64,000 bases of DNA, taken from Auanema rhodensis (lineage: Eukaryota; Animalia; Nematoda). The stretch spans positions 5,270,001 through 5,334,000 of the forward strand of contig OZ059895.1 in assembly GCA_964057225.1 (NCBI GenBank). The letters run 5' to 3'. Within the stretch, counting starts at the first letter, position 1, and each line of letters opens with the position of its first letter. A model generated the notes under the pieces. It was not told the DNA's origin and searched no databases. It saw only the letters and a list, made by a program, of their open reading frames with translations. Position numbers and translations under genes: made by a program. Below, one piece after another: positions 1 to 59,402 of this stretch.

Positions 1-52
1 GTTTGGCTCCTCCCTTTCCAAGACCTTTTCCTCCTTTACCACGTCCAGACAT
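1..52 (-). CDS. H4: Histone H4, 5' part only (cut by window edge)
   Basis: ATG at 50-52 reading [17 protein letters not shown]; identical to 3546-3597. Confidence 0.97.
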   Translation of the reverse strand, partial: MSGRGKGGKGLGKGGAK

Positions 53-514
53 GCTGATGAGTTGTTCACACTGTGTGCTTGATGAAGTGAAGAAAGTTCT
101 TCATTATATACTAGGACAGAGGAGGTCACCCTGCGACAACCCATATGAGCATTATCATCAAAAAATGCTACCAACCAGTTTTCAATATACATAGTTAAGA
201 TTATTCAAATATACACACAGGATATAGATAAATATATTTAATTCAGCTTGAAATCATTTGAATTTTTTAAAAAATTAAAAACTTTAAAATTTACTCATAT
301 AAGGCTGTTTCACATGAAAGTTATTTAGATAAACTTATTTGAATGCCGTGACATTATCATGAATTTCATTTTAAAGCCTTCAACTACTCTCTCAAAATCA
401 ACAACACATCCCATACATTGTGACATCTACGTTAGTGTAAATAGCATAAAAGCTTGCAATAATTCATACAAAACTAATTTATTTTATCACAAATAATCAT
501 ATCAAAATTAAATT

Positions 515-542
515 TGTGGCCCTAAAGAGGGCCGTTGGGTTA
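515..542 (-). promoter_or_regulatory. Histone mRNA 3' stem-loop of H3 (TAACCCAACGGCCCTCTTTAGGGCCACA); the same 28-mer follows every histone gene in the window
   Basis: GGCCCT-CTTT-AGGGCC hairpin at 518-533 downstream of the stop; also at 1513-1528 (H2A), 2413-2428 (H2B), 3237-3252 (H4) and in all other units. Confidence 0.97.
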
Positions 543-559
543 TGTAACGTTGCAAACGC

Positions 560-1084
<525 letters not shown>

Positions 1085-1556
1085 TTATATTCAAAAAAAA
1101 GATGCCTTAACATATTGTATTTAATGTAAACAACTTAAATTCAAATTTAAAAACATAACCTTACTCTTCTTCTCAACAGTAATCTTTTTTTTTTTTGGAT
1201 TTCTAACAAAAAACATGAATCAAAGGTAAATGCTATGAAAATTCAAAGATTAGAAGAAAAACAATTCTCCTTAATCTTTAAAGTTTCAGATAATTAGTTA
1301 ACTATGAATAGCATCAAAAAACTAAGCTTATCACCCTCTCCTTATAAGTAGACAATTAAAAAATTCAACCGCTTATCATCAGTCCACATTTAAAATGATG
1401 GAGCACACACACTTTGAAACTGAGGTATTTTTGAAATTATTATTGAAACATCCAACATATTTTTATTTGAATTACACAATTATTAACTCATACAGAATAA
1501 AAAGAGTAATGTGGCCCTAAAGAGGGCCGTTGGGTTAGATGATAGCAGCACATCAC

Positions 1557-1940
1557 TTATTCCTTTTCTCCGGCAGTCTTCTTGGGGAGAAGGCTGGCTT
1601 GGATGTTTGGAAGAACTCCTCCTTGAGCGATGGTTACACCGGAAAGAAGTTTGTTCAACTCTTCGTCATTTCTGACGGCAAGTTGAAGATGGCGAGGGTT
1701 GATTCTGCTCTTCTTGTTATCACGGGCAGCGTTACCAGCCAACTCAAGAACTTCAGCGGCAAGATATTCAAGAACGGCAGCAAGGTAGACTGGAGCTCCG
1801 GCACCAACACGCTTAGCGTAGTTACCTTTGCGAAGCATACGATGAAGACGTCCAACAGGGAATTGAAGTCCTGCTCTTGAAGAACGGGACTTGGCCTTTC
1901 CGCCGGTCTTAGCTTTTCCTCCTTTTCCACGTCCAGACAT
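1557..1940 (-). CDS. H2A: Histone H2A (127 aa)
   Basis: [31 protein letters not shown]...; ATG at 1938-1940. Confidence 0.99.
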
Positions 1941-2460
1941 GATGATAGCTAGTGGTGAGTTGTGAGACTCGTTAACCCCAAACAAATTGCGCACGCACTA
2001 TATACAGTATAGCAAGCAAGCTCCGCCCACCACCTTCCTTTGTTGCAGGACTAAATTTTAAAAAATGAAAACTTATGTACAATTAAAAATGAAACAACAT
2101 CATATCTAATATAGTTAGTTATAATATAAAATTGCAATTATGCATAATGAGAACAAAACCGATTTATCTGAAATTAGCATGAAGCTCAAGACGTCAATAT
2201 CATGTTGTGCTTTACATTCAGATACAGCTTGACATCCAAACAACTTATTTTCAACACTAAAACCCTATTACATTGGATAGTTAAATAATGTACCTGAATC
2301 AATATGAGCAATTCTGATAGTGCATGATGACAAAATGCGCTTCAGTACATTTAAAAAAATGTTTATTAACGTAACAACATTCAGAAAACAAAACAGCAAA
2401 TTAAGGATATGTGGCCCTAAAGAGGGCCGTTGGGTTAGGTTGCAGTACAACTCTAACAAT

Positions 2461-2832
2461 TTACTTGCTAGAGGTGTACTTGGTGACAGCCTTGGTTCCT
2501 TCAGAGACGGCGTGCTTGGCAAGTTCTCCAGGGAGGATAAGTCTGACGGCAGTCTGGACTTCGCGAGATGAGATGGTGGATCTCTTGTTGTAGTGGGCCA
2601 GACGGGAAGCCTCAGCAGCAATGCGCTCAAAAACGTCATTAACAAATGAGTTCATGATGCTCATGGCCTTGGAGGAAATTCCAGTGTCAGGGTGGACCTG
2701 CTTAAGTACACGGTAGACGTAGACAGAGTAAGATTCCTTTCTGGACTTTCTCTTCTTCTTGTCTCCGGTACGGCTGACCTTCTGGGTCTTGGCGGCTTTC
2801 TTAGCTCCCTTGGCGGATGGCTTGGGTGGCAT
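2461..2832 (-). CDS. H2B: Histone H2B (123 aa)
   Basis: [15 protein letters not shown]...[20 protein letters not shown]...AVTKYTSSK. Confidence 0.99.
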
Positions 2833-3285
2833 GGTTATTGCTACGCTGACGAATCAACTGTTAATGTACAACTCGATTTGCTGACCTATATGTTAGTTAG
2901 CGCGCAAACCACGCCCCCATGCTCAGAACTCTGGTTAGAAGCTGTACTGTAAGAAGTTTAAATAATGTTCAGCTAGTAAAACATCTGAATATATTACACA
3001 TATCCTATATAATATATAATAATATATAACCATATTCAAACTATTTAATATTACAAAACAATTTATATCAAAAGTCAACAAATTATTTTACCATGATAAT
3101 TAGCATTGAGCGGTTGTATTCCATATAGTTCTATTTAATTTTTTCCAAACAAAACAAAAAAAATTAATACAGAAAAGTTATTTATTATTATTTACATATT
3201 GATTATATCTTATAGCAATAATATTAATTTGTATGTGGCCCTAAAGAGGGCCGTTGGGTTAGGTAATAGTCACAAGATATGCAAC

Positions 3286-3645
<360 letters not shown>

Positions 3646-4104
3646 TCATTATATACTAGGACAGAGGAGGTCACCCTGCGACAACCCATATGAGCATTAT
3701 CATCAAAAAATGCTACCAACCAGTTTTCAATATACATAGTTAAGATTATTCAAATATACACACAGGATATAGATAAATATATTTAATTCAGCTTGAAATC
3801 ATTTGAATTTTTTAAAAAATTAAAAACTTTAAAATTTACTCATATAAGGCTGTTTCACATGAAAGTTATTTAGATAAACTTATTTGAATGCCGTGACATT
3901 ATCATGAATTTCATTTTAAAGCCTTCAACTACTCTCTCAAAATAAACAACACATCCCATACATTGTGACATCTACGTTAGTGTAAATAGCATAAAAGCTT
4001 GCAATAATTCATACAAAACTAATTTATTTTATCACAAATAATCATATCAAAATTAAATTTGTGGCCCTAAAGAGGGCCGTTGGGTTATGTAACGTTGCAA
4101 ACGC

Positions 4105-4629
<525 letters not shown>

Positions 4630-5102
4630 TTATATTCAAAAAAAAGATGCCTTAACATATTGTATTTAATGTAAACAACTTAAATTCAAATTTAAAAACA
4701 TAACCTTACTCTTCTTCTCAACAGTAATCTTTTTTTTTTTTTGGATTTCTAACAAAAAACATGAATCAAAGGTAAATGCTATGAAAATTCAAAGATTAGA
4801 AGAAAAACAATTCTCCTTAATCTTTAAAGTTTCAGATAATTAGTTAACTATGAATAGCATCAAAAAACTAAGCTTATCACCCTCTCCTTATAAGTAGACA
4901 ATTAAAAAATTCAACCGCTTATCATCAGTCCACATTTAAAATGATGGAGCACACACACTTTGAAACTGAGGTATTTTTGAAATTATTATTGAAACATCCA
5001 ACATATTTTTATTTGAATTACACAATTATTAACTCATACAGAATAAAAAGAGTAATGTGGCCCTAAAGAGGGCCGTTGGGTTAGATGATAGCAGCACATC
5101 AC

Positions 5103-5486
5103 TTATTCCTTTTCTCCGGCAGTCTTCTTGGGGAGAAGGCTGGCTTGGATGTTTGGAAGAACTCCTCCTTGAGCGATGGTTACACCGGAAAGAAGTTTGT
5201 TCAACTCTTCGTCATTTCTGACGGCAAGTTGAAGATGGCGAGGGTTGATTCTGCTCTTCTTGTTATCACGGGCAGCGTTACCAGCCAACTCAAGAACTTC
5301 AGCGGCAAGATATTCAAGAACGGCAGCAAGGTAGACTGGAGCTCCGGCACCAACACGCTTAGCGTAGTTACCTTTGCGAAGCATACGATGAAGACGTCCA
5401 ACAGGGAATTGAAGTCCTGCTCTTGAAGAACGGGACTTGGCCTTTCCGCCGGTCTTAGCTTTTCCTCCTTTTCCACGTCCAGACAT
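5103..5486 (-). CDS. H2A: Histone H2A
   Basis: Identical protein to 1557-1940. Confidence 0.99.
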
Positions 5487-6006
5487 GATGATAGCTAGTG
5501 GTGAGTTGTGAGACTCGTTAACCCCAAACAAATTGCGCACGCACTATATACAGTATAGCAAGCAAGCTCCGCCCACCACCTTCCTTTGTTGCAGGACTAA
5601 ATTTTAAAAAATGAAAACTTATGTACAATTAAAAATGAAACAACATCATATCTAATATAGTTAGTTATAATATAAAATTGCAATTATGCATAATGAGAAC
5701 AAAACCGATTTATCTGAAATTAGCATGAAGCTCAAGACGTCAATATCATGTTGTGCTTTACATTCAGATACAGCTTGACATCCAAACAACTTATTTTCAA
5801 CACTAAAACCCTATTACATTGGATAGTTAAATAATGTACCTGAATCAATATGAGCAATTCTGATAGTGCATGATGACAAAATGCGCTTCAGTACATTTAA
5901 AAAAATGTTTATTAACGTAACAACATTCAGAAAACAAAACAGCAAATTAAGGATATGTGGCCCTAAAGAGGGCCGTTGGGTTAGGTTGCAGTACAACTCT
6001 AACAAT

Positions 6007-6378
6007 TTACTTGCTAGAGGTGTACTTGGTGACAGCCTTGGTTCCTTCAGAGACGGCGTGCTTGGCAAGTTCTCCAGGGAGGATAAGTCTGACGGCAGTC
6101 TGGACTTCGCGAGATGAGATGGTGGATCTCTTGTTGTAGTGGGCCAGACGGGAAGCCTCAGCAGCAATGCGCTCAAAAACGTCATTAACAAATGAGTTCA
6201 TGATGCTCATGGCCTTGGAGGAAATTCCAGTGTCAGGGTGGACCTGCTTAAGTACACGGTAGACGTAGACAGAGTAAGATTCCTTTCTGGACTTTCTCTT
6301 CTTCTTGTCTCCGGTACGGCTGACCTTCTGGGTCTTGGCGGCTTTCTTAGCTCCCTTGGCGGATGGCTTGGGTGGCAT
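6007..6378 (-). CDS. H2B: Histone H2B
   Basis: Identical protein to 2461-2832. Confidence 0.99.
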
Positions 6379-6831
6379 GGTTATTGCTACGCTGACGAAT
6401 CAACTGTTAATGTACAACTCGATTTGCTGACCTATATGTTAGTTAGCGCGCAAACCACGCCCCCATGCTCAGAACTCTGGTTAGAAGCTGTACTGTAAGA
6501 AGTTTAAATAATGTTCAGCTAGTAAAACATCTGAATATATTACACATATCCTATATAATATATAATAATATATAACCATATTCAAACTATTTAATATTAC
6601 AAAACAATTTATATCAAAAGTCAACAAATTATTTTACCATGATAATTAGCATTGAGCGGTTGTATTCCATATAGTTCTATTTAATTTTTTCCAAACAAAA
6701 CAAAAAAAATTAATACAGAAAAGTTATTTATTATTATTTACATATTGATTATATCTTATAGCAATAATATTAATTTGTATGTGGCCCTAAAGAGGGCCGT
6801 TGGGTTAGGTAATAGTCACAAGATATGCAAC

Positions 6832-7191
<360 letters not shown>

Positions 7192-7650
7192 TCATTATAT
7201 ACTAGGACAGAGGAGGTCACCCTGCGACAACCCATATGAGCATTATCATCAAAAAATGCTACCAACCAGTTTTCAATATACATAGTTAAGATTATTCAAA
7301 TATACACACAGGATATAGATAAATATATTTAATTCAGCTTGAAATCATTTGAATTTTTTAAAAAATTAAAAACTTTAAAATTTACTCATATAAGGCTGTT
7401 TCACATGAAAGTTATTTAGATAAACTTATTTGAATGCCGTGACATTATCATGAATTTCATTTTAAAGCCTTCAACTACTCTCTCAAAATAAACAACACAT
7501 CCCATACATTGTGACATCTACGTTAGTGTAAATAGCATAAAAGCTTGCAATAATTCATACAAAACTAATTTATTTTATCACAAATAATCATATCAAAATT
7601 AAATTTGTGGCCCTAAAGAGGGCCGTTGGGTTATGTAACGTTGCAAACGC

Positions 7651-17553
<9,903 letters not shown>

Positions 17554-17592
17554 AATTTCTTAAATTTTCCTATTTTATGAAGTAAAATTTTA

Positions 17593-17768
17593 ATTATATC
17601 CCATGTCTTAAGCTATTTATTTTCCAAATAACATATCTTCTCGGTAATCAATAAAACAAAAATTAACAGAAATCAACAGTATTTCGTAACACATTGTAAA
17701 ATGAGCGTATCATTACCCGTGGTGCTAACCAGTAATGACACGCCCCCTAACTAACACATAAACATCAG
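17593..17768. repeat. DIRS 3' inverted terminal repeat (176 bp), preceded by a ~39-bp terminal extension at 17554-17592
   Basis: Reverse complement of 21838-22013 with no mismatch seen by eye. Confidence 0.95.
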
Positions 17769-17994
17769 AGTCAAAAAAAAAAAAAAATATAAACTTCACA
17801 ATGTAACAAGGTATAATACATCAAAACAAAAGAAACAATAAAATCACTTCTTCATTTTACTGTTGTTTCTATTAAAAGGTTTTACAGGTATTGAGTTCGA
17901 AGACGACCATCTACTGCAATAACATAAACATTTTTTTCAAGCTGAATATAAAAGAGGGATGGTGAACACACACAGGGGATGGTGGAGGGAAGTC

Positions 17995-18070
17995 AGACAT
18001 GGGATATAATTAAAATTTTACTTCATAAAATAGGAAAATTTAAGAAATTATATCCCATGTCTTAAGCTAT
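17995..18070. repeat. DIRS internal complementary region (ICR)
   Basis: Reverse complement of the left terminus joined through ATT to the reverse complement of the right terminus (taagaa-ATT-atatccc), i.e. the predicted circle junction. Confidence 0.95.
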
Positions 18071-18073
18071 CTT

Positions 18074-19285
18074 TCAAAAAATTGCAGCTTGAAAGGATCT
18101 GGTTCTGCAGTAGTGTTTGAAAAATGAAGTGTCGGATTTCCAATTTGCGGCACTCATTATAGTTTTCAATGGAACCCCTTTTTTAAAAGCTGACGAAGTA
18201 GAAGCGTGACGGGTAGAGTGCGCAGAAAATCTATGCGGTATTTTTGCCAACGATAAAATATCCCTTATCCACCGAGCTACTGTTGTACTTGTAATACTCG
18301 TTCCTTGTGAGATGGATATCAGTAAATTATTTGAAAGCCGTTTAGACTCAGTTTTGTCTAAATATGCTTTGATACATGCTACCGGACAGAGTAACGGTCT
18401 GTCTAAAGAAATCTCATAGGTAGCTTTATGAGGTATTCCCGCTTTTCTATTTTTATTTCTATAATTTATGAAAAACGTAACACCGTTATCATTGAATTGA
18501 ACATGGTCTATAGAGAACTGCGCTATTTCTGACACTCGTTTTGGGGAGCATAAAGCTAATAGCATTGCTAATTTTTTGGTTAGTAGTTCCAACGATAATT
18601 CGTTGTTGGGCCCCAGACTTTCTAAATATGAAAGAACAATGGAAGGTTCCCAAGAATCTATATATTTAGGTTGTGGAGGTTTTAATCTGAACGCTCCCCT
18701 AGATATTCTACTAAGTAAAGGGTTATCCCGAAGAGGGGGACTAATTTTCAGAAAGTCAGCTAAAGCACAAAGTGCGGATTTATAGCCCAAAACTGTTGAA
18801 ACGGCTTTGTCGTTAAACATAGATGACAAAAAATCTGCAGCGGTTGAAGGAGAGGGAGTAATAGAAATTTTGTGAGAAGCACAATAAATTTCCCACTTTT
18901 TAAGAGCTGTATTATATTGCTTACGAGTTCCTGCAGCCCAGGAGTTTAAGAATAGAGACATGGTATCATTAGATATATCAGGAATTAGGCCAGTCAAATT
19001 CTCCATGCTAAGAGCTGGAAGTTGTGGCTCTTCAACAGTGGGTGAACTTCTCCCACTGGGTTCCGTAAGAGGTAAGGGTGTTGTAATACCCGTACTTCCT
19101 TGTGAATTTTCTTTAATGTAGGGAACCAATATTGACTTGTCCAGTTCGGAGCTATTAAGATTGCTTTGCATCGATCTCGAACAATCTTTGCTATTGCTTT
19201 CCCCACCATTGAAAATGGAGGGAAAATGTAAGCGTATCCTTGTGATACTTCTGCCCAATTTACGGCAAAGGAGTTGATAAAGCAA
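18074..19285 (-). CDS. DIRS tyrosine recombinase (YR); true start uncertain; overlaps the 3' end of pol in another frame
   Basis: N-terminal TRKQYNTALKKW; catalytic set PKRVSEI (R), NKNRK (K), HSTR (HxxR), AANW (W), FKHY (Y); LCPVACI motif. Confidence 0.93.
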   Translation of the reverse strand: MLYQLLCRKLGRSITRIRLHFPSIFNGGESNSKDCSRSMQSNLNSSELDKSILVPYIKENSQGSTGITTPLPLTEPSGRSSPTVEEPQLPALSMENLTGLIPDISNDTMSLFLNSWAAGTRKQYNTALKKWEIYCASHKISITPSPSTAADFLSSMFNDKAVSTVLGYKSALCALADFLKISPPLRDNPLLSRISRGAFRLKPPQPKYIDSWEPSIVLSYLESLGPNNELSLELLTKKLAMLLALCSPKRVSEIAQFSIDHVQFNDNGVTFFINYRNKNRKAGIPHKATYEISLDRPLLCPVACIKAYLDKTESKRLSNNLLISISQGTSITSTTVARWIRDILSLAKIPHRFSAHSTRHASTSSAFKKGVPLKTIMSAANWKSDTSFFKHYCRTRSFQAAIF

Positions 19286-21057
19286 GCTCCCGGGTCTGGA
19301 AGGTATGAAATATATCTATCTAATTTGAAATTATTTGAAGAAGCAAATAGATCAATGTTAGGTGTTCCCCATTCAAGGAATATTTCTTTAATGATTTCAT
19401 CATGTAAGGACCACTCCTCACTATCTAAGAACTGTCCTCTCGATAACTTGTCGGCGGAAATATTTTGTCGTCCCGGAATATGAGAAGCTTTTATTCTGAT
19501 ACCGCGGACAGTGCAAAATTCCCATAACTTTAAGGCTATATCTGAGCCTTCAGCCGAACGAGTGCCTCCTCGTTTGTTAATATAAGCAATAGCCGACATG
19601 TTATCAAGAAGTAAGGTCACGTCTACGTAACTTTTAGATTTGAGGAAGAAGGAAACCGCTTTATAAGCAGCGCTCAGTTCTCTCCAGTTAATATGAAGTT
19701 TCTTTTCTTCAATAGACCAGATTCCGGAAATTTGTTGACCGTCCATACAACCTCCATATCCTCGCAAGGAAGCGTCGGATGTTATAGTTATCGAAGGTGA
19801 AAACGGACAAAACGAAACAGGCAGATGCATTACAGTTTCCAAGATAAATTTAACTTGAGGAAATATTATGTCCAAATCTCGCGATCTATTTAACTTTTCG
19901 TTAATGTGTAAAGAAGAAGAGAGAGCTTTCAAGGATACCACACCTAGCGCACGTTGGAGAGAGTGAACGAAAAAACTGATTTCGGGATGAACAATAGCAG
20001 TAAAGTTCAATAAGCCCAACAGGGATGCAAAACATCTTAATGTGGCGTCTGGTTTATTTACCCGATCTAATGCATTTTGAATGCGATCTAACTTTGATAC
20101 TGGTATTGACCATGTACCTTCCTGGGCATTTAGATTGATTCCCAGAAATTCTATTCTTTGAGTAGGGATTAAAATGGACTTAGTGTGGTTAACTGAGAAA
20201 CCAGATTGCTTGAATAAACACAAGGCTAACTGAATATGCTCTTGTACTTGAGTGACAGATGACCCAATAAACAGCCAATCGTCTAGATAGTTAATAATGC
20301 GAACTCCTTTACTTCGTAAATACGAAGCAAGGACTCTAACGATCTTATGAAAAGTGAATGGAGCTGAACTAAGGCCAAATGGCATGGCTTGAAAAACATA
20401 ACCAGAACCTCCAGCTCGAAAAGCTAGGAAAGGTTGATGTTCTGGATCAATAGGAACAGCATGATATGCAGACGAAAAATCTATTTTAGCTAACCAATCC
20501 GATGGTTGTATCAATAGTGATACATCTTTAATTGATTCTAGCTTGAAGGGAAGGTCCTGCAGATATGAATTGAGTCGTCTCAGATTCAAAATAAAGCGAA
20601 ACTCTCCATCTTTCTTGGGCACAACAAAAGCAGGGGATAAGAATACCTTTTCATTTTCTTGAATAGGTCTAATGGTGCCTTCTGACAGCATATCCACTAT
20701 CAATAAGTCAAGGTTTCTTGAAGAGACCGAGTTATTAAGCGAGGAATCAAAATTACTCAAAGGAGGTAGAGAACCGTTAAATGGTAAACGATAATTAATA
20801 ACTGATTGCAAAATGAACAAATCAGACGAAATAGAAAACCAAAATGAACAATGATTGGCTAATGAACGTGCAGAAAAGGAGGGAACTAACTTCGTACGTT
20901 GAGCAACAGAGCGGGAAGTAGTTTTCCTATTAACAGTGTGTCTACGGTCCGATGGTACCACACGACGTTGAGATTGCTCCGAGCGGTGTTTCATAACCTC
21001 GTTAGGTTTTCTCAGTTCGGCTCGCAGTGCTCGCCCAAACAGTTCCACGGCCTGAGC
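18994..21057 (-). CDS. DIRS pol: reverse transcriptase + RNase H + N6-adenine methyltransferase-like domain (probably exon 2 of a spliced gag-pol)
   Basis: RT: FVVPKKDG, KIDFSSAYH, MPFGLSSAP, NYLDDW, IEFLG; RNase H: TSDAS, HINWREL, LDNMSA, NISADKLSR; MT-like: IDLFAS, YIFPPF, APNWTSQYW. Confidence 0.95.
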   Translation of the reverse strand, partial: AQAVELFGRALRAELRKPNEVMKHRSEQSQRRVVPSDRRHTVNRKTTSRSVAQRTKLVPSFSARSLANHCSFWFSISSDLFILQSVINYRLPFNGSLPPLSNFDSSLNNSVSSRNLDLLIVDMLSEGTIRPIQENEKVFLSPAFVVPKKDGEFRFILNLRRLNSYLQDLPFKLESIKDVSLLIQPSDWLAKIDFSSAYHAVPIDPEHQPFLAFRAGGSGYVFQAMPFGLSSAPFTFHKIVRVLASYLRSKGVRIINYLDDWLFIGSSVTQVQEHIQLALCLFKQSGFSVNHTKSILIPTQRIEFLGINLNAQEGTWSIPVSKLDRIQNALDRVNKPDATLRCFASLLGLLNFTAIVHPEISFFVHSLQRALGVVSLKALSSSLHINEKLNRSRDLDIIFPQVKFILETVMHLPVSFCPFSPSITITSDASLRGYGGCMDGQQISGIWSIEEKKLHINWRELSAAYKAVSFFLKSKSYVDVTLLLDNMSAIAYINKRGGTRSAEGSDIALKLWEFCTVRGIRIKASHIPGRQNISADKLSRGQFLDSEEWSLHDEIIKEIFLEWGTPNIDLFASSNNFKLDRYISYLPDPGACFINSFAVNWAEVSQGYAYIFPPFSMVGKAIAKIVRDRCKAILIAPNWTSQYWFPTLKKIHKEVRVLQHPYLLRNPVGEVHPLLKSHNFQLLAWRI

Positions 21058-21100
21058 CTGTAAAACAAATAATATAAGGTTAAAAGGCGGAGTGACTTAC
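21058..21100 (-). other. Putative 43-nt spliceosomal intron at the gag/pol boundary (GTAAGT...TTTTACAG, phase 0)
   Basis: Consensus donor and acceptor; contains the gag stop; removal joins DTVLG to AQAVELFGR in the pol frame; size matches the host-type introns at 48461-48998. Confidence 0.75.
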
Positions 21101-21805
21101 TCCTAGTACCGTATCAAAGGAGGAAGACGAACTAAGGCCAACTTTACGATAGTTCGGCATGCTCTGTGAAGGGCGAGAGAATCCCATTCTGAGAAGGGCA
21201 AGCTCTCGAGTTGCTCCTAAGAAAGTGCGCAGATTTGCACTGACAAAGCGTTCCAGAATTGAGAGATAACCAGCAACTTTCGGAGAAAGTGGGCCACCTT
21301 CATCATTGGATCCGAGAAAACGGATAATAGTAACGATATTCAAAACTTGTAACTCGTTTTCGTAAAGTCCTCGTAACTCCTGTTCTGATACTTTATGAAA
21401 TGATCTCGTTGAGCCATCCAAAAGATTTTGAAGTTTAGAGTCCAACACCGGGAGATCTGCTAAGATGGATTCCGGGCGAGGGAGTTCTTGAATTAGGGAT
21501 GAGCGGTCCGAAGGAAGGAGAGTAATACCAGCTGCGAGATGTTCAAAGTTAGTAAGAAGATCTTCCGCAAGCGAGATAACCGGTCGTTCCTTGGAGGCTG
21601 GAGTTGAAGGAGGTAGAGGAACAGAGCTAGGTTGAGGACAAGGCCTCTGGCGCTTGACAGGCCTGAGAGATAGTGAACAGGATCTAGATGACGAAACGGA
21701 TCTAGAACGTGAACGTCGAATATCTTGCTCTCGCGAAGGCGAACGCGAATAATGAGACGAAGAATCCAAATCACGGGGAGTTGAAGGTTCCCGTGAAGAC
21801 GGCAT
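21080..21805 (-). CDS. DIRS ORF1 (Gag-like, RS-rich N-terminus; 241 aa unspliced)
   Basis: First ORF after the 5' ITR; clearly homologous to the ORF of the second element (NFEHLAAG/NFEHLASG, AGYLS, MPNYRK/MPSFRK). Confidence 0.85.
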   Translation of the reverse strand: MPSSREPSTPRDLDSSSHYSRSPSREQDIRRSRSRSVSSSRSCSLSLRPVKRQRPCPQPSSVPLPPSTPASKERPVISLAEDLLTNFEHLAAGITLLPSDRSSLIQELPRPESILADLPVLDSKLQNLLDGSTRSFHKVSEQELRGLYENELQVLNIVTIIRFLGSNDEGGPLSPKVAGYLSILERFVSANLRTFLGATRELALLRMGFSRPSQSMPNYRKVGLSSSSSFDTVLGVSHSAF

Positions 21806-21837
21806 AGCGACCGATCAGCGTATGTCGGAAAATAAAA

Positions 21838-22013
21838 CTGATGTTTATGTGTTAGTTAGGGGGCGTGTCATTACTGGTTAGCACCACGGGTAATGATACG
21901 CTCATTTTACAATGTGTTACGAAATACTGTTGATTTCTGTTAATTTTTGTTTTATTGATTACCGAGAAGATATGTTATTTGGAAAATAAATAGCTTAAGA
22001 CATGGGATATAAT
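21838..22013. repeat. DIRS 5' inverted terminal repeat (176 bp)
   Basis: Reverse complement of 17593-17768. Confidence 0.95.
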
Positions 22014-25000
22014 CTGAATATTTTATTGAAATTTTGCCAGGATCTATCTGTTCTCCGGAAAAACGGTTTATATCGATTCCACCCTGAAGATTGTTCACAA
22101 AAAAGTTCAGGCTGTGAACAAGATGTGACTGCTGAATCCCCCTTTTTCTCCTCGATCATGAGTGATATCCAGGTGAATGTATACAGAACTTTTGTAATAA
22201 AATGTGTAGAATCTGAATATTTTATTGAAATTTTGCCAGGATCTATCTGTTTTCCGGAAAAACGGTTTATATCGAATCCACCCTGAAGATTGTTCACAAA
22301 AAAGTTCAGGCTGTGAACAAGATGTGACTGGTGAATCCCCCTTTTTCTGCTCGATCATGAGTGATATCCAGGTGAAAGTATACAGAACTAGGGTATTAAA
22401 ATGTGTAGAATCTGAATATTTTATTGAAATTTTGCCAGGATCTATCTGTTTTCCGGAAAAACGGTTTATATCGAATCCACCCTGAAGATTGTTCACAAAA
22501 AAGTTCAGGCTGTGAACAAGATGTGACTGCTGAATCCCCCTTTTTCTCCTCGATCATGAGTGATATCCAGGTGAAAGTATACAAAACTTGGGTATTAAGA
22601 TGTGTAGAATCTGAATATTTTATTGAAATTTTGCCAGGATCTATCTGTTCTCCGGAAAAACGGTTTATATCGATTCCACCCTGAAGATTGTTCACAAAAA
22701 AGTTCAGGCTGTGAACAAGATGTGACTGGTGAATCCCCCTTTTTCTCCTCGATCATGAGTGTTATCCTGGTGAAAGTATACAGAACTAGGGTATTAAAAT
22801 GTGTAGAATCTGAATATTTTATTGAAATTTTGCCAGGATCTATCTGTTTTCCGGAAAAACGGTTTATATCGATTCCACCCTGAAGATTGTTCACAAAAAA
22901 GTTCAGGCTGTGAACAAGATGTGACTGCTGAATCCCCCTTTTTCTCCTCGATCATGAGTGATATCCAGGTGAAAGTATACAAAACTTGGGTATTAAGATG
23001 TGTAGAATCTGAATATTTTATTGAAATTTTGCCAGGATCTATCTGTTTTCCGGAAAAACGGTTTATATCGATTCCACCCTGAAGATTGTTCACAAAAAAG
23101 TTCAGGCTGTGAACAAGATGTGACTGGTGAATCCCCCTTTTTCTGCTCGATCATGAGTGATATCCAGGTGAAAGTATACAGAACTAGGGTATTAAGATGT
23201 GTAGAATCTGAATATTTTATTGAAATTTTGCCAGGATCTATCTGTTTTCCGGAAAAACGGTTTATATCGAATCCACCCTGAAGATTGTTCACAAAAAAGT
23301 TCAGGCTGTGAACAAGATGTGACTGCTGAATCCCCCTTTTTCTCCTCGATCATGAGTGTTATCGAAGTGAATGTATACAGAACTTGGGTATTAAAATGTG
23401 TAGAATCTGAATATTTTATTGAAATTTTGCCAGGATCCATCTGTTTTCCGGAAAAACGGTTTATATCGATTCCACCCTGAAGATTGTTCACAAAAAAGTT
23501 CAGGCTGTGAACAAGATGTGACTGCTGAATCCCCCTTTTTCTGCTCGATCATGAGTGATATCCAGGTGAAAGTATACAGAACTTGGGTATTAAAATGTGT
23601 AGAATCTGAATATTTTATTGAAATTTTGACAGGATCTATCTGTTTTCCAGAAAAACGGTTTATATCGAATCCACCCTGAAGATTGTTCACAAAAAAGTTC
23701 AGGCTGTGAACAAGATGTGACTGCTGAATCCCCCTTTTTCTGCTCGATCATGAGTGATATCCAGGTGAAAAAATACAGAACTTGGGTATTAAAATGTGTA
23801 GAATCTGAATATTTTATTGAAATTTTGCCAGGATCCATCTGTTTTCCGGAAAAACGGTTTATATCGATTCCACCCTGAAGATTGTTCACAAAAAAGTTCA
23901 GGCTGTGAACAAGATGTGACTGCTGAATCCCCCTTTTTCTCCTCGATCATGAGTGATATCCAGGTGAAAGTATACAGAACTTGGGTATTAAAATGTGTAG
24001 AATCTGAATATTTTATTGAAATTTTGCCAGGATCCATCTGTTTTCCGGAAAAACGGTTTATATCGAATCCACCCTGAAGATTGTTCACAAAAAAGTTCAG
24101 GCTGTGAACAAGATGTGACTGCTGAATCCCCCTTTTTCTCCTCGATCATGAGTGATATCCAGGTGAAAGTATACAGAACTTGGGTATTAAAATGTGTAGA
24201 ATCTGAATATTTTATTGAAATTTTGACAGGATCTATCTGTTTTCCAGAAAAACGGTTTATATCGAATCCACCCTGAAGATTGTTCACAAAAAAGTTCAGG
24301 CTGTGAACAAGATGTGACTGGTGAATCCCCCTTTTTCTGCTCGATCATGAGTGATATCCAGGTGAAAAAATACAGAACTTGGGTATTAAGATGTGTAGAA
24401 TCTGAATATTTTATTGAAATTTTGCCAGGATCCATCTGTTTTCCGGAAAAACGGTTTATATCGATTCCACCCTGAAGATTGTTCACAAAAAAGTTCAGGC
24501 TGTGAACAAGATGTGACTGCTGAATCCCCCTTTTTCTGCTCGATCATGAATGATATCCAGGTGAAAGTATACAGAACTTGGGTATTAAGATGTGTAGAAT
24601 CTGAATATTTTATTGAAATTTTGCCAGGATCTATCTGTTTTCCGGAAAAACGGTTTATATCGAATCCACCCTGAAGATTGTTCACAAAAAAGTTCAGGCT
24701 GTGAACAAGATGTGACTGCTGAATCCCCCTTTTTCTGCTCGATCATGAGTGATATCCAGGTGAAAAAATACAGAACTTGGGTATTAAAATGTGTAGAATC
24801 TGAATATTTTATGGAAATTTTGCCAGGATCTATCTGTTTTCCGGAAAAACGGTTTATATCGATTCCACCCTGAAGATTGTTCACAAAAAAGTTCAGGCTG
24901 TGAACAAGATGTGACTGCTGAATCCCCCTTTTTCTGCTCGATCATGAATGATATCCAGGTGAAAGTATACAGAACTTGGGTATTAAGATGTGTAGAATCT

Positions 25001-48010: not shown

Positions 48011-48418
48011 TAATAATATACAAAAAGTTGACGCTGGCGCACCTTTTTTGCCCAAATGCGATTTTGCAGATTTTCAACAATTTAAAAACATTTTTTCATT
48101 GAAAATCATACTTAATTTCCCCACAATGTGTCATTTTTCAAAAATGACCAAAATTTGTCTGGCGCACCACTTACCCATTTGGCCCACTTTCATTTTTACT
48201 TGTATTTATTGTTTTTATTGCTATTAAATGATCTTTTCAGAAAACCTCGGAGCTCTAACAAATTATGATCTCATTTAATTAGTAGACACATTAAAGATCA
48301 AGAATTTCAGAGGAATCTTTATGAGACATATTTATACTCATTGCAATATTTCAAAAATATATTTTAATCAATACTTCGCGAAAACGTACAGACAAGATCA
48401 CCGGATGAATAGCTGAGA

Positions 48419-49193
48419 TCAAACGTGCATATCATCCAATTTGTTCTTTTGCGGTGGTTCCTAAAGTTAAATGATAACAATTGAACCAACTCCTTAACTG
48501 AATCAACTTACATCAGTATCAGAGATTCCGGCGATTACCACAATCATGTCACAGCTCACAATTTTCGTATCCGGCTTGTGGTGCGCAATCTCTGGAATAG
48601 TCATATTCGAGAGATTTGAGCAGGCGAAGTCTTTACTTCCAATAGAAATTCCGATAAGACAACCATCATCATTATATAGTCCAGATCCAGAGTCGCCTAG
48701 ATTTCCGTGTGACGTACCGTAAAAATTAGAACCTAAATCGAACAATTAACATCTTACAGTTAAGAAACTAGACTTACGGCGTTTCTCAGCAACGATTCCA
48801 CTATTCCAAGTGACATCTCGTTTCGAGTTCACCCCTAACTGCTTGTAATCTTCTCCACAGAACATATATCGAATACGTGGAACCTCGGGAAAAAATCCTG
48901 TTCTTATTTCGAAAATAGCAACATCGTAAAGCTGAGAAATGGCCTTCACAGTAGCCTAAAAGCAGCAAGTAGTTCAATTAATTGGAAAAAAAACGAACCT
49001 CCACTTTGATATCCGGGTTTAAGACGTTATACAAATGAATAACTTCAGCTTCCTTGAGCTTAGAGTGAGATCCATGAGCGAAGGAAACTGCGTGCTTCTC
49101 ATCAAATACGACAGCACAACAGTGTATGGTGGCATCCGGTGGTGACGTGGTAAAAATCATTCTTTCCAACCTCTTCACGGTTTCTTTAAGCAT
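48419..49193 (-). CDS. Trypsin-like (PA clan) serine protease, ~211 aa, 4 exons: 49193-48999, 48955-48778, 48732-48512, 48460-48419
   Basis: Three GT-AG introns (43, 45, 51 nt) join the ORF fragments in frame; catalytic triad motifs AVSFAH (His), YDVAIF (Asp), GDSGSG (Ser) followed by LIGI. Confidence 0.82.
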
Positions 49194-49212
49194 CGTATTC
49201 AGTAAAAATTGC

Positions 49213-49220
49213 CTGAAAAA
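49213..49220 (-). promoter_or_regulatory. TTTTTCAG acceptor 19 nt upstream of the protease ATG; likely trans-splice site behind a U-rich outron
   Basis: Nematode consensus TTTTCAG with no obvious upstream donor or exon in ~130 nt of pyrimidine-rich sequence. Confidence 0.55.
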
Positions 49221-49381
49221 CATTTATTACTAAAGTATAAGGATTATTATAACAATATTTAGTTGTAAACTTATAAGGAGAATGAATAGAGTTTTACACG
49301 ATAGAAGAAAAGAGAAAGTTGAAAGTTGTTAAAGAAACCAGAAACGGGAAAAGGGTGCAATTGCCCACCTCGTCCAGCTCT

Positions 49382-49395
49382 CCCCCCCCCCCCCC
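49382..49395. repeat. C14/G14 homopolymer tract
   Basis: 14 consecutive C on the plus strand. Confidence 0.9.
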
Positions 49396-49904: not shown

Positions 49905-50276
49905 TTACTTGCTAGAGGTGTACTTGGTGACAGCCTTGGTTCCTTCAGAGACGGCGTGCTTGGCAAGTTCTCCAGGGAGGATAAGTCTGACGGCAGTCTG
50001 GACTTCGCGAGATGAGATGGTGGATCTCTTGTTGTAGTGGGCCAGACGGGAAGCCTCAGCAGCAATGCGCTCAAAAACGTCATTAACAAATGAGTTCATG
50101 ATGCTCATGGCCTTGGAGGAAATTCCAGTGTCAGGGTGGACCTGCTTAAGTACACGGTAGACGTAGACAGAGTAAGATTCCTTTCTGGACTTTCTCTTCT
50201 TCTTGTCTCCGGTACGGCTGACCTTCTGGGTCTTGGCGGCTTTCTTAGCTCCCTTGGCGGATGGCTTGGGTGGCAT
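49905..50276 (-). CDS. H2B: Histone H2B
   Basis: Identical protein to other copies. Confidence 0.99.
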
Positions 50277-52077: not shown

Positions 52078-52500
52078 CTAAGTTATGACGTAAAATTAAG
52101 ATTATATTCCACGTCTCAGCTATTTATTACGAAAACATCTCGGTTACAAAAAACAAAAATTTCAACATATTAGTTGCGAAATAGGGTTGTAAACAGCGAA
52201 CTAACCCTAGGTACAATAACGATTAACTAAACTCCACAGGCTTTCAAAAACAAAACAATATTAAAATAAACATTTCCAAGTGAATTATAAAACAATGAAA
52301 CAAAATTAAGATCTTTTAAATTTGTTATATCCGTTCTTGTTATAGGTTCTCAATATGCTGAATTTACTATAAAACAATAATCAGCGGAAGGTGAAAGAAA
52401 AAGGGGTGGAAGGTGGGATTTAGAGGCGTGGAATATAATTGATAATTTTACGTCATAACTTAGCAAAATTATCAATTATATTCCACGTCTCAGCTATCTT

Positions 52501-52590
52501 TCAGCAAATAACAGCGGATAGAAACGATGGAGTAAAATGATAATGTTTAAAGAAAGAGTTATCTGAACTCCAATTGGCAGCTTTGCTTAT
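52501..52590 (-). pseudogene. C-terminal remnant of tyrosine recombinase
   Basis: Translates as ISKAANWSSDNSFFKHYHFTPSFLSAVIC*, aligning with IMSAANWKSDTSFFKHYCRTRSFQAAIF* of the full element, at the same position next to the ICR. Confidence 0.88.
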
Positions 52591-53557
52591 GATGACTTGC
52601 TTCGTTAGAGACTCCGAGTTCATCACGTAGAGAGCGTCCAAATAGGTCTACAGCTTCAAGCTGAAAAGAGCTGGAGTTAATATTCTTATTTAACTTACTT
52701 AAGTATACTCCGGAACTGTGGTCTACTGAGGACGACGAAGATAATGATGCTTTACGAAAGCTGGGCATACCGCTTGTAGGGCGAGAAATGCCCATCCGGA
52801 GAAGATAGAATTCGCGATGTAGCGAAATATGCGTCCTTATATCAGCACTGAACAGCCGTTCCATAACTGAGAGATATCCAGCTAGTTTGGGATGGAAAGG
52901 AGCTCCTTTATCGTCGGAACCCAAGACTCTAGCCACTGCGATGAGGTTCAGAGTTTTCAGGTCAATTTCGTACAGTCCTTTCATCTCGGAGTCGGAGACT
53001 TCAAAGCCGGTACGAGAAGAGGTTTCTACCAGACTAATCAGCTTTTTATCCACAATTGGGATGTCCACGTACTTGCTATCCACGTGTGGGAGCTCGCTGA
53101 TGAGCGATACACGGTCCGTCTGGGACATATATAGGCCAGAAGCCAAGTGCTCAAAATTGTCCAATTGAGCCTTGCTAAGGCTAAACGTATTGCGAGATTT
53201 ATTTTCCAGGACCACTGTTGGAGATGGAATACTCTCCCAGACTGGTCGGGCTCTGGGTTGTGGACTGGAGCGAGATCTGGATCGAGATCTCCAGCTACCA
53301 TCCGTTTTGAAACGAGAAAGGGAGAACGAATTCCGCCCCAAGCGGGCAGGAATTCTACGTCGAGGAAGACGTACCTCTCGCAATCTGGAACGAGATCGAT
53401 TGTGGGCGAGAGAAGTTGATCTGGAACGAGATCGGTTGTTTGCGAGAGAATTTGATTCTTCCTTGTCATGAAGCCGGTAAGAAACCTTCGGGCGTAGAGG
53501 AGAGATATCCGGAGAAGAAACGTCTTCATTTTCTTCTCTATGAGGAGAGGAAACCAT
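52559..53557 (-). CDS. Gag-like ORF1 of the deleted DIRS, reading through an intron-like segment into the first codons of pol and across the deletion junction
   Basis: ATG at 53555-53557; homologous to 21080-21805, and EAVDLFGRSLRDEL matches QAVELFGRALRAEL at the pol start. Confidence 0.82.
   Translation of the reverse strand: MVSSPHREENEDVSSPDISPLRPKVSYRLHDKEESNSLANNRSRSRSTSLAHNRSRSRLREVRLPRRRIPARLGRNSFSLSRFKTDGSWRSRSRSRSSPQPRARPVWESIPSPTVVLENKSRNTFSLSKAQLDNFEHLASGLYMSQTDRVSLISELPHVDSKYVDIPIVDKKLISLVETSSRTGFEVSDSEMKGLYEIDLKTLNLIAVARVLGSDDKGAPFHPKLAGYLSVMERLFSADIRTHISLHREFYLLRMGISRPTSGMPSFRKASLSSSSSVDHSSGVYLSKLNKNINSSSFQLEAVDLFGRSLRDELGVSNEASHHKQSCQLEFR
52661..52708 (-). other. Putative intron at the gag/pol boundary (48 nt GTATAC...TTTTCAG, or 38 nt from GTAAGT at 52698)
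   Basis: AT-rich insert ending in a perfect TTTTCAG at the position homologous to 21058-21100. Confidence 0.65.
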
Positions 53558-54201
53558 GGTCACCGAGTAGTAGGAGTTCTCAAATAAAAATGAGGAGTTA
53601 AGTTAATTGTTATTGTACCTAGGGTTAGTACGCTGTTTACAAACCTATTTCGCAACTAATATGTTGAAATTTTTGTTTTTTGTAACCGAGATGTTTTCGT
53701 AATAAATAGCTGAGACGCGGAATGAAATATTATATTCAAAAAAAAGATGCCTTAACATATTGTATTTAATGTAAACAACTTAAATTCAAATTTAAAAACA
53801 TAACCTTACTCTTCTTCTCAACAGTAATCTTTTTTTTTTTTGGATTTCTAACAAAAAACATGAATCAAAGGTAAATGCTATGAAAATTCAAAGATTAGAA
53901 GAAAAACAATTCTCCTTAATCTTTAAAGTTTCAGATAATTAGTTAACTATGAATAGCATCAAAAAACTAAGCTTATCACCCTCTCCTTATAAGTAGACAA
54001 TTAAAAAATTCAACCGCTTATCATCAGTCCACATTTAAAATGATGGAGCACACACACTTTGAAACTGAGGTATTTTTGAAATTATTATTGAAACATCCAA
54101 CATATTTTTATTTGAATTACACAATTATTAACTCATACAGAATAAAAAGAGTAATGTGGCCCTAAAGAGGGCCGTTGGGTTAGATGATAGCAGCACATCA
54201 C

Positions 54202-56747: not shown

Positions 56748-58929
<2,182 letters not shown>

Positions 58930-59402
58930 ATTATATTCAAAAAAAAGATGCCTTAACATATTGTATTTAATGTAAACAACTTAAATTCAAATTTAAAAAC
59001 ATAACCTTACTCTTCTTCTCAACAGTAATCTTTTTTTTTTTTGGATTTCTAACAAAAAACATGAATCAAAGGTAAATGCTATGAAAATTCAAAGATTAGA
59101 AGAAAAACAATTCTCCTTAATCTTTAAAGTTTCAGATAATTAGTTAACTATGAATAGCATCAAAAAACTAAGCTTATCACCCTCTCCTTATAAGTAGACA
59201 ATTAAAAAATTCAACCGCTTATCATCAGTCCACATTTAAAATGATGGAGCACACACACTTTGAAACTGAGGTATTTTTGAAATTATTATTGAAACATCCA
59301 ACATATTTTTATTTGAATTACACAATTATTAACTCATACAGAATAAAAAGAGTAATGTGGCCCTAAAGAGGGCCGTTGGGTTAGATGATAGCAGCACATC
59401 AC

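What the first reader, a model, noticed from the sequence alone, without database searches (positions are those of the whole stretch)
21058..21100. Spliceosomal intron controls the Gag to Gag-Pol switch in a DIRS retrotransposon, at a position conserved in two diverged families
Seen: gag has 235 whole codons, then GTAAGT...TTTTACAG (43 nt, containing the gag stop), then GCT CAG GCC GTG GAA CTG in the pol frame. Splicing gives ...DTVLG|AQAVELFGRALRAEL... and one Gag-RT-RH-MT polyprotein. The second family has an AT-rich segment ending in TTTTCAG at the same place (...DHSSG|[16 codons]|LEAVDLFGRSLRDEL). Protein similarity resumes immediately after the acceptor, upstream of the first pol ATG, so that stretch is probably translated as a fusion. 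Established: retroelements usually set Gag:Pol ratios by frameshift or readthrough, and reverse transcription of spliced RNA should purge introns. Inference: unspliced RNA serves as Gag mRNA and genome, spliced RNA makes Gag-Pol, and something biases packaging or selection towards intron-retaining RNA. Introns have occasionally been noted in YR retroelements, so novelty needs a literature check.
Basis: partly seen in the sequence, partly recalled or inferred. Interest (0 to 1): 0.85.

Follow-up and report, generated by a model that had tools for sequence, protein, structure and literature searches.

The report
Short intron between gag and pol
A nematode DIRS-type retrotransposon carries what looks by every sequence test like a host-style 43-base intron exactly between its gag and pol genes, so splicing probably decides whether Gag alone or a Gag-Pol fusion is made, but no RNA data were available to show the splice.

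Summary
A 43-nt GTAAGT...TTTTACAG piece (21100-21058) contains the gag stop. pol then follows in the +1 frame.

Comparison makes a real spliceosomal intron the best reading:
- Four DIRS families in this genome carry a GT...AG piece of 43, 48, 45 and 45 nt at the same codon boundary.
- A fifth family lacks exactly that piece and has one 958-codon Gag-Pol frame.
- Outside relatives are also continuous there.
- Host actin introns are 44-47 nt with the same end signals.
- The pieces are AT-rich, and the one informative pair differs evenly across codon positions.

The "switch" reading fits family 1 only. In the other three families the piece is in frame and stop-free, so unspliced RNA also encodes Gag-Pol.

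Splicing itself is untested, because no RNA run held the element. A +1 frameshift at GCC_UUU_UAA_C remains a rival.

The mechanism has a plant precedent, the Ogre Ty3/gypsy elements. I found no report of it for DIRS elements. First-stage readers flagged the same feature on two other pieces of this genome.

The parts
17557..22013 (-). Complete DIRS1-like tyrosine-recombinase retrotransposon (family 1), 4457 bp, inserted without target-site duplication into a 199-bp satellite
   Evidence: Satellite arrays end at 17556 and resume at about 22011-22014. All copies begin ATTATATC next to different flanks.
21838..22013 (-). 5' inverted terminal repeat
   Evidence: arms 17584-17768 and 21838-22022, 98% complementary. 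The last 9 nt of the second arm lie in the satellite.
21101..21805 (-). gag, exon 1: 235 codons, ATG to GGA
   Evidence: Homologous to the gag of four other families in this genome and to outside proteins. No Pfam family.
21058..21100 (-). Putative phase-0 spliceosomal intron, 43 nt, GTAAGT...TTTTACAG, GC 33% against 48-54% in the flanks
   Evidence: Splicing itself was not observed.
21080..21088 (-). GCC TTT TAA: the gag stop codon in unspliced RNA, and the only plausible +1 frameshift site (rival reading)
   Evidence: the gag frame stops at 21082-21080 and the pol frame is open from 21095. tRNA-Phe could re-pair one base forward on TTTT.
18994..21057 (-). pol, exon 2: 687 codons plus stop, with reverse transcriptase and a Dam-like methyltransferase
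20992..20994 (-). First ATG in the pol frame (codon 22 of exon 2), downstream of the conserved ELFG motif
18074..19285 (-). Tyrosine recombinase open frame, overlapping the end of pol. An ATG (MENLTG...) lies about 13 nt before the pol stop.
   Evidence: PF00589, E 1e-13.
17995..18070 (.). Internal complementary region: complementary to both element termini
   Evidence: pairs I2 and I3.
17584..17768 (-). 3' inverted terminal repeat
   Evidence: pair I1.
52097..53732 (-). Family 2 element, internally deleted and non-autonomous, inside a histone-gene repeat unit
52661..52708 (-). Family 2 intron-like piece: 48 nt, GTATAC...TTTTCAG, in frame, no stop, GC 27%
57298..58933 (-). Second copy of the family 2 element, duplicated together with the histone unit (period 5201 bp)
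57862..57909 (-). The same 48-nt piece in the second copy

Best explanation
The 43-nt piece is a genuine short, phase-0, U2-type spliceosomal intron. It sits in the linker between gag and pol of a DIRS1-like retrotransposon of a nematode.

The intron position is shared by a clade of DIRS families in this genome. It was either lost once (family 3) or, less likely, gained twice at the same site.

Proposed mechanism in family 1:
- The intron is 43 nt and carries a stop.
- Unspliced full-length RNA therefore encodes Gag only. It is also the template that is reverse-transcribed, which is why every copy keeps the intron.
- The spliced fraction joins ...DTVLG to AQAVELFGR... and encodes the Gag-RT-RNase H-methyltransferase fusion.
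- Splicing efficiency would then set the Gag to Gag-Pol ratio, as in plant Ogre elements.

In families 2, 4 and 5 the intron is a multiple of three and stop-free. Spliced and unspliced RNA both encode Gag-Pol there, and nothing is switched.

Shown here: the anatomy, the conserved position, the precise absence in family 3, the likeness to host introns, and retention through at least 8 transpositions.

Inferred: that the piece is spliced in vivo, that splicing is partial, and that proteins act on unspliced RNA.
For: 1. Same boundary in all families. Five residues after an invariant Asp and four residues before [ED]LFG, families 1, 2, 4 and 5 each carry a piece that starts GT and ends AG, of 43, 48, 45 and 45 nt. 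Family 3 joins GAG|GAT with nothing between. With fixed boundaries, GT plus AG in three independent lineages has a chance of about (1/256)^3.

2. Spacing in relatives. Outside relatives and family 3 have 18-21 residues between the P[SN][YF] and [ED]LFG motifs. Removing the pieces gives 20-21, keeping them gives 36.

3. Likeness to host introns. Six actin introns of this genome are 44-47 nt with GC 19-32%. Their donors are GTATGA, GTAACT, GTAAAT, GTTTAG and GTAAGA, and their 3' ends are T-rich followed by CAG, TAG or AAG. The element pieces are 43-48 nt with GC 27-40%, against 46-54% in their flanks.

4. Substitution pattern. Family 4 versus family 5 differs 3:4:5 by codon position in the piece, against 33:21:126 in gag.

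5. Faster change in the piece. The oldest family-1 copy has 4 changes in the 43 nt against 11 in the 705 nt of gag (Fisher p = 0.008). GT, AG and the length are kept.

6. Translation of exon 2. Its first 20 codons show 9 synonymous-only differences between families 1 and 2. The stretch is therefore translated in the pol frame, yet no ATG precedes it there.

7. Retention. Eight family-1 copies with different flanks all keep the 43 nt.

8. Recurrence elsewhere. Two unrelated outside elements (L085, L086) have AT-rich GT...AG pieces of 132 and 86-98 nt that end the gag frame. Both lie in the same linker, at another shared position.

9. Precedent. [quoted passage not shown]
Against: - No spliced RNA was seen. 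The only three runs offered held none of the element.
- The donors of families 2 (GTATAC) and 4 (GTAGGA) are weak.
- Two of three independent lineages have in-frame, stop-free pieces. The chance is about 0.09 per lineage, or about 0.02 for two of three. This shows that translation through the piece matters and fits a coding linker as well.
- The piece diverges only 27% between families 4 and 5, far less than third codon positions (about 50%). It is therefore constrained, not free.
- Family 3 thrives without the piece, so a splice-set ratio is dispensable.
- A clean +1 slippery site lies in the 14-nt overlap of the two frames.
- The gag tree leaves an intron-less outside element (P0121) in an unresolved three-way split with the two intron-bearing groups. 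Loss versus double gain is therefore not settled.
Confidence: 0.6

Rival explanations
1. Programmed +1 ribosomal frameshifting. Ribosomes translating unspliced RNA pause at the gag stop in GCC_UUU_UAA_C. tRNA-Phe slips one base forward on UUUU, and translation continues in the pol frame. The fusion would then carry about 14 extra residues.
For: The pol frame is open from 21095 and the gag frame stops at 21082-21080. The overlap contains UUU_UAA, with perfect re-pairing after a +1 slip and a stop codon in the A site. The oldest copy keeps UUU_UAG. Stop-adjacent +1 sites are established in prfB, antizyme and Ty elements (general knowledge; reviewed in PMC5009743, which I did not read in detail).
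Against: - It explains family 1 only. It does not explain why four families share GT...AG pieces at one boundary, or why family 3 lacks exactly that piece.
- The product would have 34-35 residues between the two motifs where relatives have 20-21.
- A T-run before a stop is not rare in 33% GC sequence.
- The two mechanisms do not exclude each other.
Confidence: 0.1
2. Pol is made on its own, not as a fusion. Either the spliced leader SL1 is trans-spliced onto the TTTTACAG acceptor, or ribosomes start internally at the ATG at 20994-20992.
For: The genome has large arrays of canonical SL1 genes (GGTTTAATTACCCAAGTTTGAG), so trans-splicing exists in this host. The acceptor matches the nematode consensus.
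Against: - A strong donor (GTAAGT) lies 43 nt upstream, within the host's intron size class. This favours cis-splicing.
- The 21 codons upstream of that ATG, including the ELFG motif, are conserved at protein level with many synonymous changes. They are continuous with gag in all relatives. A product starting at the ATG would lack them.
Confidence: 0.08
3. The piece is not spliced at all. It is a variable coding linker in families 2, 4 and 5. Family 1 is a pol-dead derivative, with its frame broken by a small indel, that spread using proteins supplied in trans or by segmental duplication.
For: In-frame, stop-free pieces in families 2, 4 and 5, and peptide-level similarity between families 4 and 5 (9 of 15 residues). 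Family-1 copies are 97-100% alike, so intact frames could reflect youth alone.
Against: - GT and AG lie at fixed boundaries in every family, with T-rich ...CAG ends, low GC and a host-intron size.
- Substitutions are flat across codon positions.
- Family 3 shows a precise 45-nt absence.
- The flanks of the 8 copies differ, so they arose by transposition and not by duplication.
- The 43-nt state is already present in the oldest copy, about 3% diverged, and seven more insertions followed.
- No close autonomous helper exists. Family 2 is 47% identical in gag and is present only as a deleted copy.
Confidence: 0.12

Closest known systems
Ogre elements (plant Ty3/gypsy LTR retrotransposons)
   Same: Two non-overlapping frames, gag-protease and RT-RNase H-integrase, are separated by an intron. 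It is spliced from only part of the transcripts, so that the whole polyprotein can be translated (PMC6317226, citing Neumann 2003 and Steinbauerova 2008; also PMC3735527). This is the logic proposed here for family 1.
   Different: Ogre is a different class (LTR with integrase, not tyrosine recombinase) in a different kingdom. Its spacer averages 274 bp, against 43 nt here. Its splicing was shown experimentally; here it was not. Sister families here carry in-frame or absent versions.
copia (Drosophila) and BARE1 / plant Ty1-copia elements
   Same: Alternative splicing of the element's own RNA sets the Gag to Pol balance, and only unspliced RNA is replicated (PMC3735527, PMC5580714).
   Different: The direction is opposite. 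There the spliced RNA encodes Gag only and the unspliced RNA encodes Gag-Pol.
Penelope-like elements
   Same: Retroelements that keep spliceosomal introns through retrotransposition (the title 'Retroelements containing introns in diverse invertebrate taxa' is cited in PMC3681739 and PMC4209133).
   Different: No gag, a different reverse transcriptase clade, and target-primed insertion. The intron is not at a gag-pol boundary.
DIRS-1 of Dictyostelium and DIRS1-like elements of animals
   Same: Inverted terminal repeats plus an internal complementary region, RT-RNase H-methyltransferase, an overlapping tyrosine recombinase frame, and no target-site duplication (PMC7192593, PMC3266345, PMC4157794).
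   Different: I found no native intron described for them in the papers I could read. Those papers describe overlapping frames. Outside relatives found here mostly have gag and pol continuous.
Retroviral and foamy-virus subgenomic splicing
   Same: Unspliced RNA is the genome and spliced RNA serves for another product (established knowledge).
   Different: Retroviral Gag-Pol is made by frameshift or readthrough on unspliced RNA. Foamy-virus Pol comes from a spliced mRNA but is not fused to Gag.

Membership tests
DIRS1-like tyrosine-recombinase retrotransposon | Reverse transcriptase domain | tested here: met
   PF00078, E 2e-22, 80 bits against a cut-off of 29.6.
DIRS1-like tyrosine-recombinase retrotransposon | Tyrosine recombinase instead of a DDE integrase | tested here: met
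   PF00589, E 1e-13, 51.6 bits against a cut-off of 27.1, in the 403-codon frame overlapping pol.
DIRS1-like tyrosine-recombinase retrotransposon | Dam-like methyltransferase domain after RNase H | tested here: inconclusive
   PF05869, E 9e-6, but 25.9 bits is below the 28.1 cut-off. Homologues carry the domain in precomputed hits.
DIRS1-like tyrosine-recombinase retrotransposon | Inverted terminal repeats plus an internal complementary region (not the split direct repeats of PAT elements) | tested here: met
   185-nt inverted arms, 98% complementary. 17995-18070 is complementary to both termini.
U2-type spliceosomal intron of the host | GT...AG ends with host-like extended signals | tested here: met
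   GTAAGT and TTTTACAG. Host actin introns show GTAAGA, GTAAAT, GTATGA and T-rich CAG, TAG or AAG ends.
U2-type spliceosomal intron of the host | Length and composition within the host's intron class | tested here: met
   43 nt, GC 33%. Host actin introns are 44-47 nt with GC 19-32%; only six were sampled.
U2-type spliceosomal intron of the host | Presence or absence at exact boundaries among homologues, with removal restoring the conserved protein | tested here: met
U2-type spliceosomal intron of the host | Removed from RNA in vivo | not testable with these tools
   No RNA run holds the element. The three runs laid gave zero coverage.
Ogre-type intron-controlled Gag / Gag-Pol expression | gag and pol in separate frames, joined only by removal of the spacer | tested here: met
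   Met for family 1. Not met for families 2, 4 and 5 (in frame) or family 3 (no piece).
Ogre-type intron-controlled Gag / Gag-Pol expression | Partial splicing, with both RNA forms present | not testable with these tools
   No RNA data. Retention of the piece in all 8 copies shows only that unspliced RNA is the template.
Ogre-type intron-controlled Gag / Gag-Pol expression | Member of the Ogre / Ty3-gypsy lineage | tested here: not met
   The element is a DIRS type with a tyrosine recombinase. It is a functional analogue only.
Programmed +1 frameshift site | Slippery codon next to a slowly decoded or stop codon, within the frame overlap | tested here: inconclusive
   GCC_UUU_UAA_C is present. 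No functional test was possible.
Programmed +1 frameshift site | Conservation of the site among related elements | tested here: not met
   The other families have no frame change or no piece at all.

The most novel reading that the evidence does not exclude
Introns in the gag-pol linker are a recurrent, selected feature of a whole clade of DIRS elements. They occur at one position in four families of this nematode and at another shared position in two unrelated outside elements.

Two benefits are proposed. First, host-like splicing marks the transcript as a gene and blunts nuclear small-RNA silencing. In C. elegans, introns are a barrier that silencing needs the Aquarius helicase to overcome (PMC5554785). 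Second, the intron is kept translatable, or else used as a Gag / Gag-Pol valve. Proteins then still act on unspliced RNA, and that is how a retroelement keeps an intron over many cycles.

Family 3 would be the escape product: a reverse-transcribed spliced RNA.
Probability: 0.2. Interest if true: 0.85.

Novelty: new variant of a known kind. Interest (0 to 1): 0.62.

Why it matters
Reverse transcription of spliced RNA should erase introns from retroelements. Elements that keep one therefore show how the RNA used for translation and the RNA used for replication are kept apart.

This genome offers a natural series within one clade:
- a frame-breaking intron (family 1),
- in-frame, translatable introns (families 2, 4 and 5),
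- a precise loss (family 3).

Three questions become directly testable with RNA-seq and reporters:
- Does splicing set the Gag to Gag-Pol ratio outside plants?
- How are unspliced templates chosen?
- Does an intron help a transposon escape nematode small-RNA surveillance?

It would also be the first such case, as far as I could find, in tyrosine-recombinase retrotransposons. Their gene expression is poorly understood.

Tried and rejected
RNA evidence:
- The look-up of sequencing runs listed only three small runs of the same species label, each with next to none of the element's words. Laying them gave zero coverage. This says nothing either way about expression.

Searches that found nothing useful:
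- A word-indexed protein search with gag found nothing.
- The pol search found no relative above 37% identity. Close sister species could therefore not be sampled.
- A metagenome scan with the gag alignment found no relative.
The 3' flanks and full lengths of the other copies were not read.

Papers:
- Not held, so not checked for earlier mentions of introns: PubMed id 11606703 (recalled as Goodwin and Poulter 2001), PMC1462361 (recalled as the Volvox kangaroo paper) and PMC2596294 (Steinbauerova 2008).
- The DIRS surveys I could read (PMC3266345, PMC4157794, PMC3783388) contain no mention of introns.

Readings rejected:
- Copies made by segmental duplication: the flanks differ.
- A chance GT...AG: shuffles give 0.01 per element.
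- The family-4 deletion copy L030 as a spliced retrocopy: its deletion ends inside the piece, not at GT/AG.
- L087, from a large animal genome, has a 49-53-nt frame-breaking GT...AG piece further upstream. No choice of boundaries gave a clean join, so I count it as undecided.

Not done:
One 30-nt frame check of the alternative family-2 donor was read inside a script only.

Full report
**What is there**

The feature lies on the minus strand. A 4457-bp element (17557-22013) interrupts a 199-bp satellite at GTAGAAT^CTGAAT, without target-site duplication.

Its parts, in element order:
- a 5' inverted repeat;
- gag, 21805-21101, 235 codons;
- the 43-nt piece, 21100-21058;
- pol, 21057-18994, 687 codons, with RT PF00078 (E 2e-22) and a Dam-like methyltransferase PF05869 (E 9e-6, just under Pfam's cut-off);
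- an overlapping tyrosine recombinase frame, 19285-18074 (PF00589, E 1e-13);
- an internal complementary region, 17995-18070, that pairs with both termini;
- a 3' inverted repeat.

This is the anatomy of a DIRS1-like element, not of a PAT element.

The host is a nematode. Its histone H2B reads like that of C. elegans (from memory; no comparison was run). Its genome holds large arrays of genes with the canonical SL1 leader.

**The observation**

The piece starts GTAAGT, ends TTTTACAG and holds the gag stop (TAA, 21082-21080). Because 43 = 42 + 1, pol is in the +1 frame. A donor-to-acceptor pattern of this kind occurs once in the element on both strands. Block shuffles give 0.01.

**Comparison inside the genome**

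Exon-by-exon searches of the window's own assembly (181 Mb, 112 contigs) found five DIRS families.

| Family | Piece | Ends | Frame | Copies |
|---|---|---|---|---|
| 1 | 43 nt | GTAAGT...TTTTACAG | out of frame, stop inside | 8, at different insertion sites, all with the piece |
| 2 | 48 nt | GTATAC...TTTTCAG | in frame, no stop | one internally deleted element, present twice because its histone unit was duplicated |
| 4 | 45 nt | GTAGGA...TTCTCAG | in frame, no stop | about 11, seven with 897-1033-codon frames running through gag, piece and pol |
| 5 | 45 nt | GTAAAT...TTCTCAG | in frame, no stop | one |
| 3 | none | exons meet as GAG\|GAT | single frame | about 12, ten with one 958-codon Gag-Pol frame |

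In the protein alignment, exon 1 ends in the same column in all five families: five residues after an invariant Asp. Exon 2 begins four residues before [ED]LFG in all five. The pieces therefore share one codon boundary, and each begins GT and ends AG.

**Comparison outside the genome**

A profile of the five gag exons, run against 1.8 billion representative proteins, found 29 relatives. Where they reach the linker, P[SN][YF] and [ED]LFG are 18-21 residues apart in one continuous frame. Removing the pieces from families 1, 2, 4 and 5 gives 20-21 residues. Keeping them gives 36. The pieces are thus insertions relative to the conserved protein.

**Likeness to host introns**

Six actin introns were read, with boundaries fixed by the known actin protein sequence. 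They are 44-47 nt with GC 19-32%. Their donors include GTAAGA, GTAAAT and GTATGA, and their 3' ends are T-rich CAG, TAG or AAG. The element pieces are 43-48 nt with GC 27-40%, in flanks of 46-54%.

**Substitution patterns**

- Families 4 and 5 differ at codon positions 1:2:3 as 33:21:126 in gag, but 3:4:5 in the piece. The piece lacks the coding signature. At 27% divergence it is still constrained, as expected if most of a minimal intron is signal, or if it is also read as protein.
- The oldest family-1 copy has 4 changes in the 43 nt against 11 in the 705 nt of gag (p = 0.008). It keeps GT, AG, the length and a stop.
- The first 20 codons of exon 2 differ between families 1 and 2 by 9 synonymous-only codons, with 3 identical and 8 replaced. 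The stretch is therefore translated in the pol frame, yet family 1 has no ATG there before codon 22.

**Direction of change**

The gag tree groups (1,2) and (3,(4,5)), with support 84/90, 100/99 and 99/97. These two groups form an unresolved three-way split with the intron-less outside element P0121.

One gain plus a loss in family 3, or two gains at the same site, cost the same in parsimony. I favour loss, because reverse transcription of a spliced RNA gives exactly the family-3 state. That argument is inference.

**How it most likely works**

In family 1, unspliced RNA gives Gag and serves as the template. A spliced fraction gives Gag-Pol.

- All eight insertions keep the piece, so templates were unspliced.
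- If splicing is a minor fate, as with a typical retroelement excess of Gag, eight of eight needs no special packaging filter.
- In families 2, 4 and 5 both RNA forms encode Gag-Pol. In-frame, stop-free pieces in two of three independent lineages are unlikely by chance (about 0.02). Translation through the retained intron thus seems to be selected.
- Family 3 shows that the clade can live with a permanent fusion.

**Rivals**

- **+1 frameshift.** A shift at GCC_UUU_UAA_C is mechanically clean, but it explains one family only and predicts a linker 14 residues too long.
- **Separate Pol.** SL1 trans-splicing or internal initiation would discard the conserved ELFG stretch.
- **Unspliced coding linker with a dead family 1.** This is contradicted by the GT/AG boundaries, the precise absence in family 3, the different flanks, and continued transposition after the 43-nt state arose.

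None of these is excluded without RNA.

**Recurrence elsewhere**

Two outside elements have AT-rich GT...AG pieces that end the gag frame:
- L085 (a JGI metagenome): 132 nt, GC 20% against about 50% in the flanks.
- L086 (a Logan assembly): 86 or 98 nt, GC 33% against 53-63%.

Both are phase 1 at the same point, ten codons upstream of the site studied here. In both, removal restores 21 residues before LFG. The hosts are unknown, and this too is sequence inference only.

**What is known**

- Ogre elements of plants split gag-protease from pol by an intron that is spliced from only part of the transcripts (PMC6317226, PMC3735527).
- copia and BARE use splicing in the opposite direction (PMC3735527, PMC5580714).
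- Penelope-like elements keep introns.
- The DIRS surveys I could read do not mention introns (PMC3266345, PMC4157794, PMC3783388). Older subscription papers were not available.
- First-stage readers of this scan noted the same 43-nt feature on two other pieces of this genome. These are other copies of family 1, not independent evidence.

**Limits**

- No RNA evidence.
- Only six host introns were sampled.
- Other copies were read over 3.6 kb only.

**Verdict**

An intron is strongly supported by comparison but not shown by RNA. The switch is plausible for family 1 only. The novelty is a new variant of a known strategy.

Noticed in passing
window 1-7978 and 48012-64000; satellite 7979-17556 and 22014-48011: The window is a tandem histone gene array: a 3546-bp unit with H2A, H2B, H3 and H4, each match carrying a histone 3' stem-loop. 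About 40 kb of a 199-bp satellite splits the array, and the satellite in turn holds the family-1 element.
   Followed up: partly
window 52097-53732 and 57298-58933: A 1.64-kb deleted DIRS element (family 2) sits between H3 and H2A of a histone unit. The unit with the insert (5201 bp) is itself repeated at least twice next to insert-free 3546-bp units. The array was therefore reshuffled after the insertion.
   Followed up: partly
L009-L016 (family 1 copies on contigs C1, C3, C4, C6, C8): Seven of the eight family-1 insertions lie in tandem repeats: three in the 199-bp-type satellite and four in AT-rich repeats. The join is always directly at ATTATATC. This suggests a preference for satellite DNA.
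   Followed up: partly
window about 18994-19010, minus strand: An ATG of the recombinase frame (MENLTG...) lies about 13 nt before the pol stop codon. The layout would suit termination-reinitiation or internal initiation for the recombinase.
   Followed up: no
window 52661-52708, minus strand: Family 2 has a second, stronger donor (GTAAGT) 10 nt inside its 48-nt piece. Its use would remove 38 nt and run into a stop at once, giving Gag only. This would be a possible alternative-donor switch, untested and below the host's sampled intron sizes.
   Followed up: partly
G000:C3:6.74-7.10 Mb (L075, L076): At least 51 SL1 spliced-leader RNA genes with the canonical 22-nt leader, in arrays where neighbouring genes lie 252 or 504 bp apart. 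They score 54-62 bits, below Rfam's 75-bit cut-off.
   Followed up: partly
L085:725-856 and L086:1053-1138/1150: Two DIRS elements from unrelated public samples carry AT-rich GT...AG pieces between gag and pol. Both lie at one shared position, ten codons upstream of the site studied here, and the gag stop is inside the piece.
   Followed up: partly
L070-L072, L069 (host actin genes): Four of the six actin introns carry a TACT[AT]A[AT]-like motif about 14 nt before the 3' end, resembling a branch-site consensus. Families 1, 2 and 4 have TTTTAAC, TATTAAC and TATTAAT at comparable distances.
   Followed up: no
window 53383-53456 and 58584-58657: A 36-nt tandem duplication inside the Ser/Arg-rich N-terminal part of family-2 gag.
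   Followed up: no
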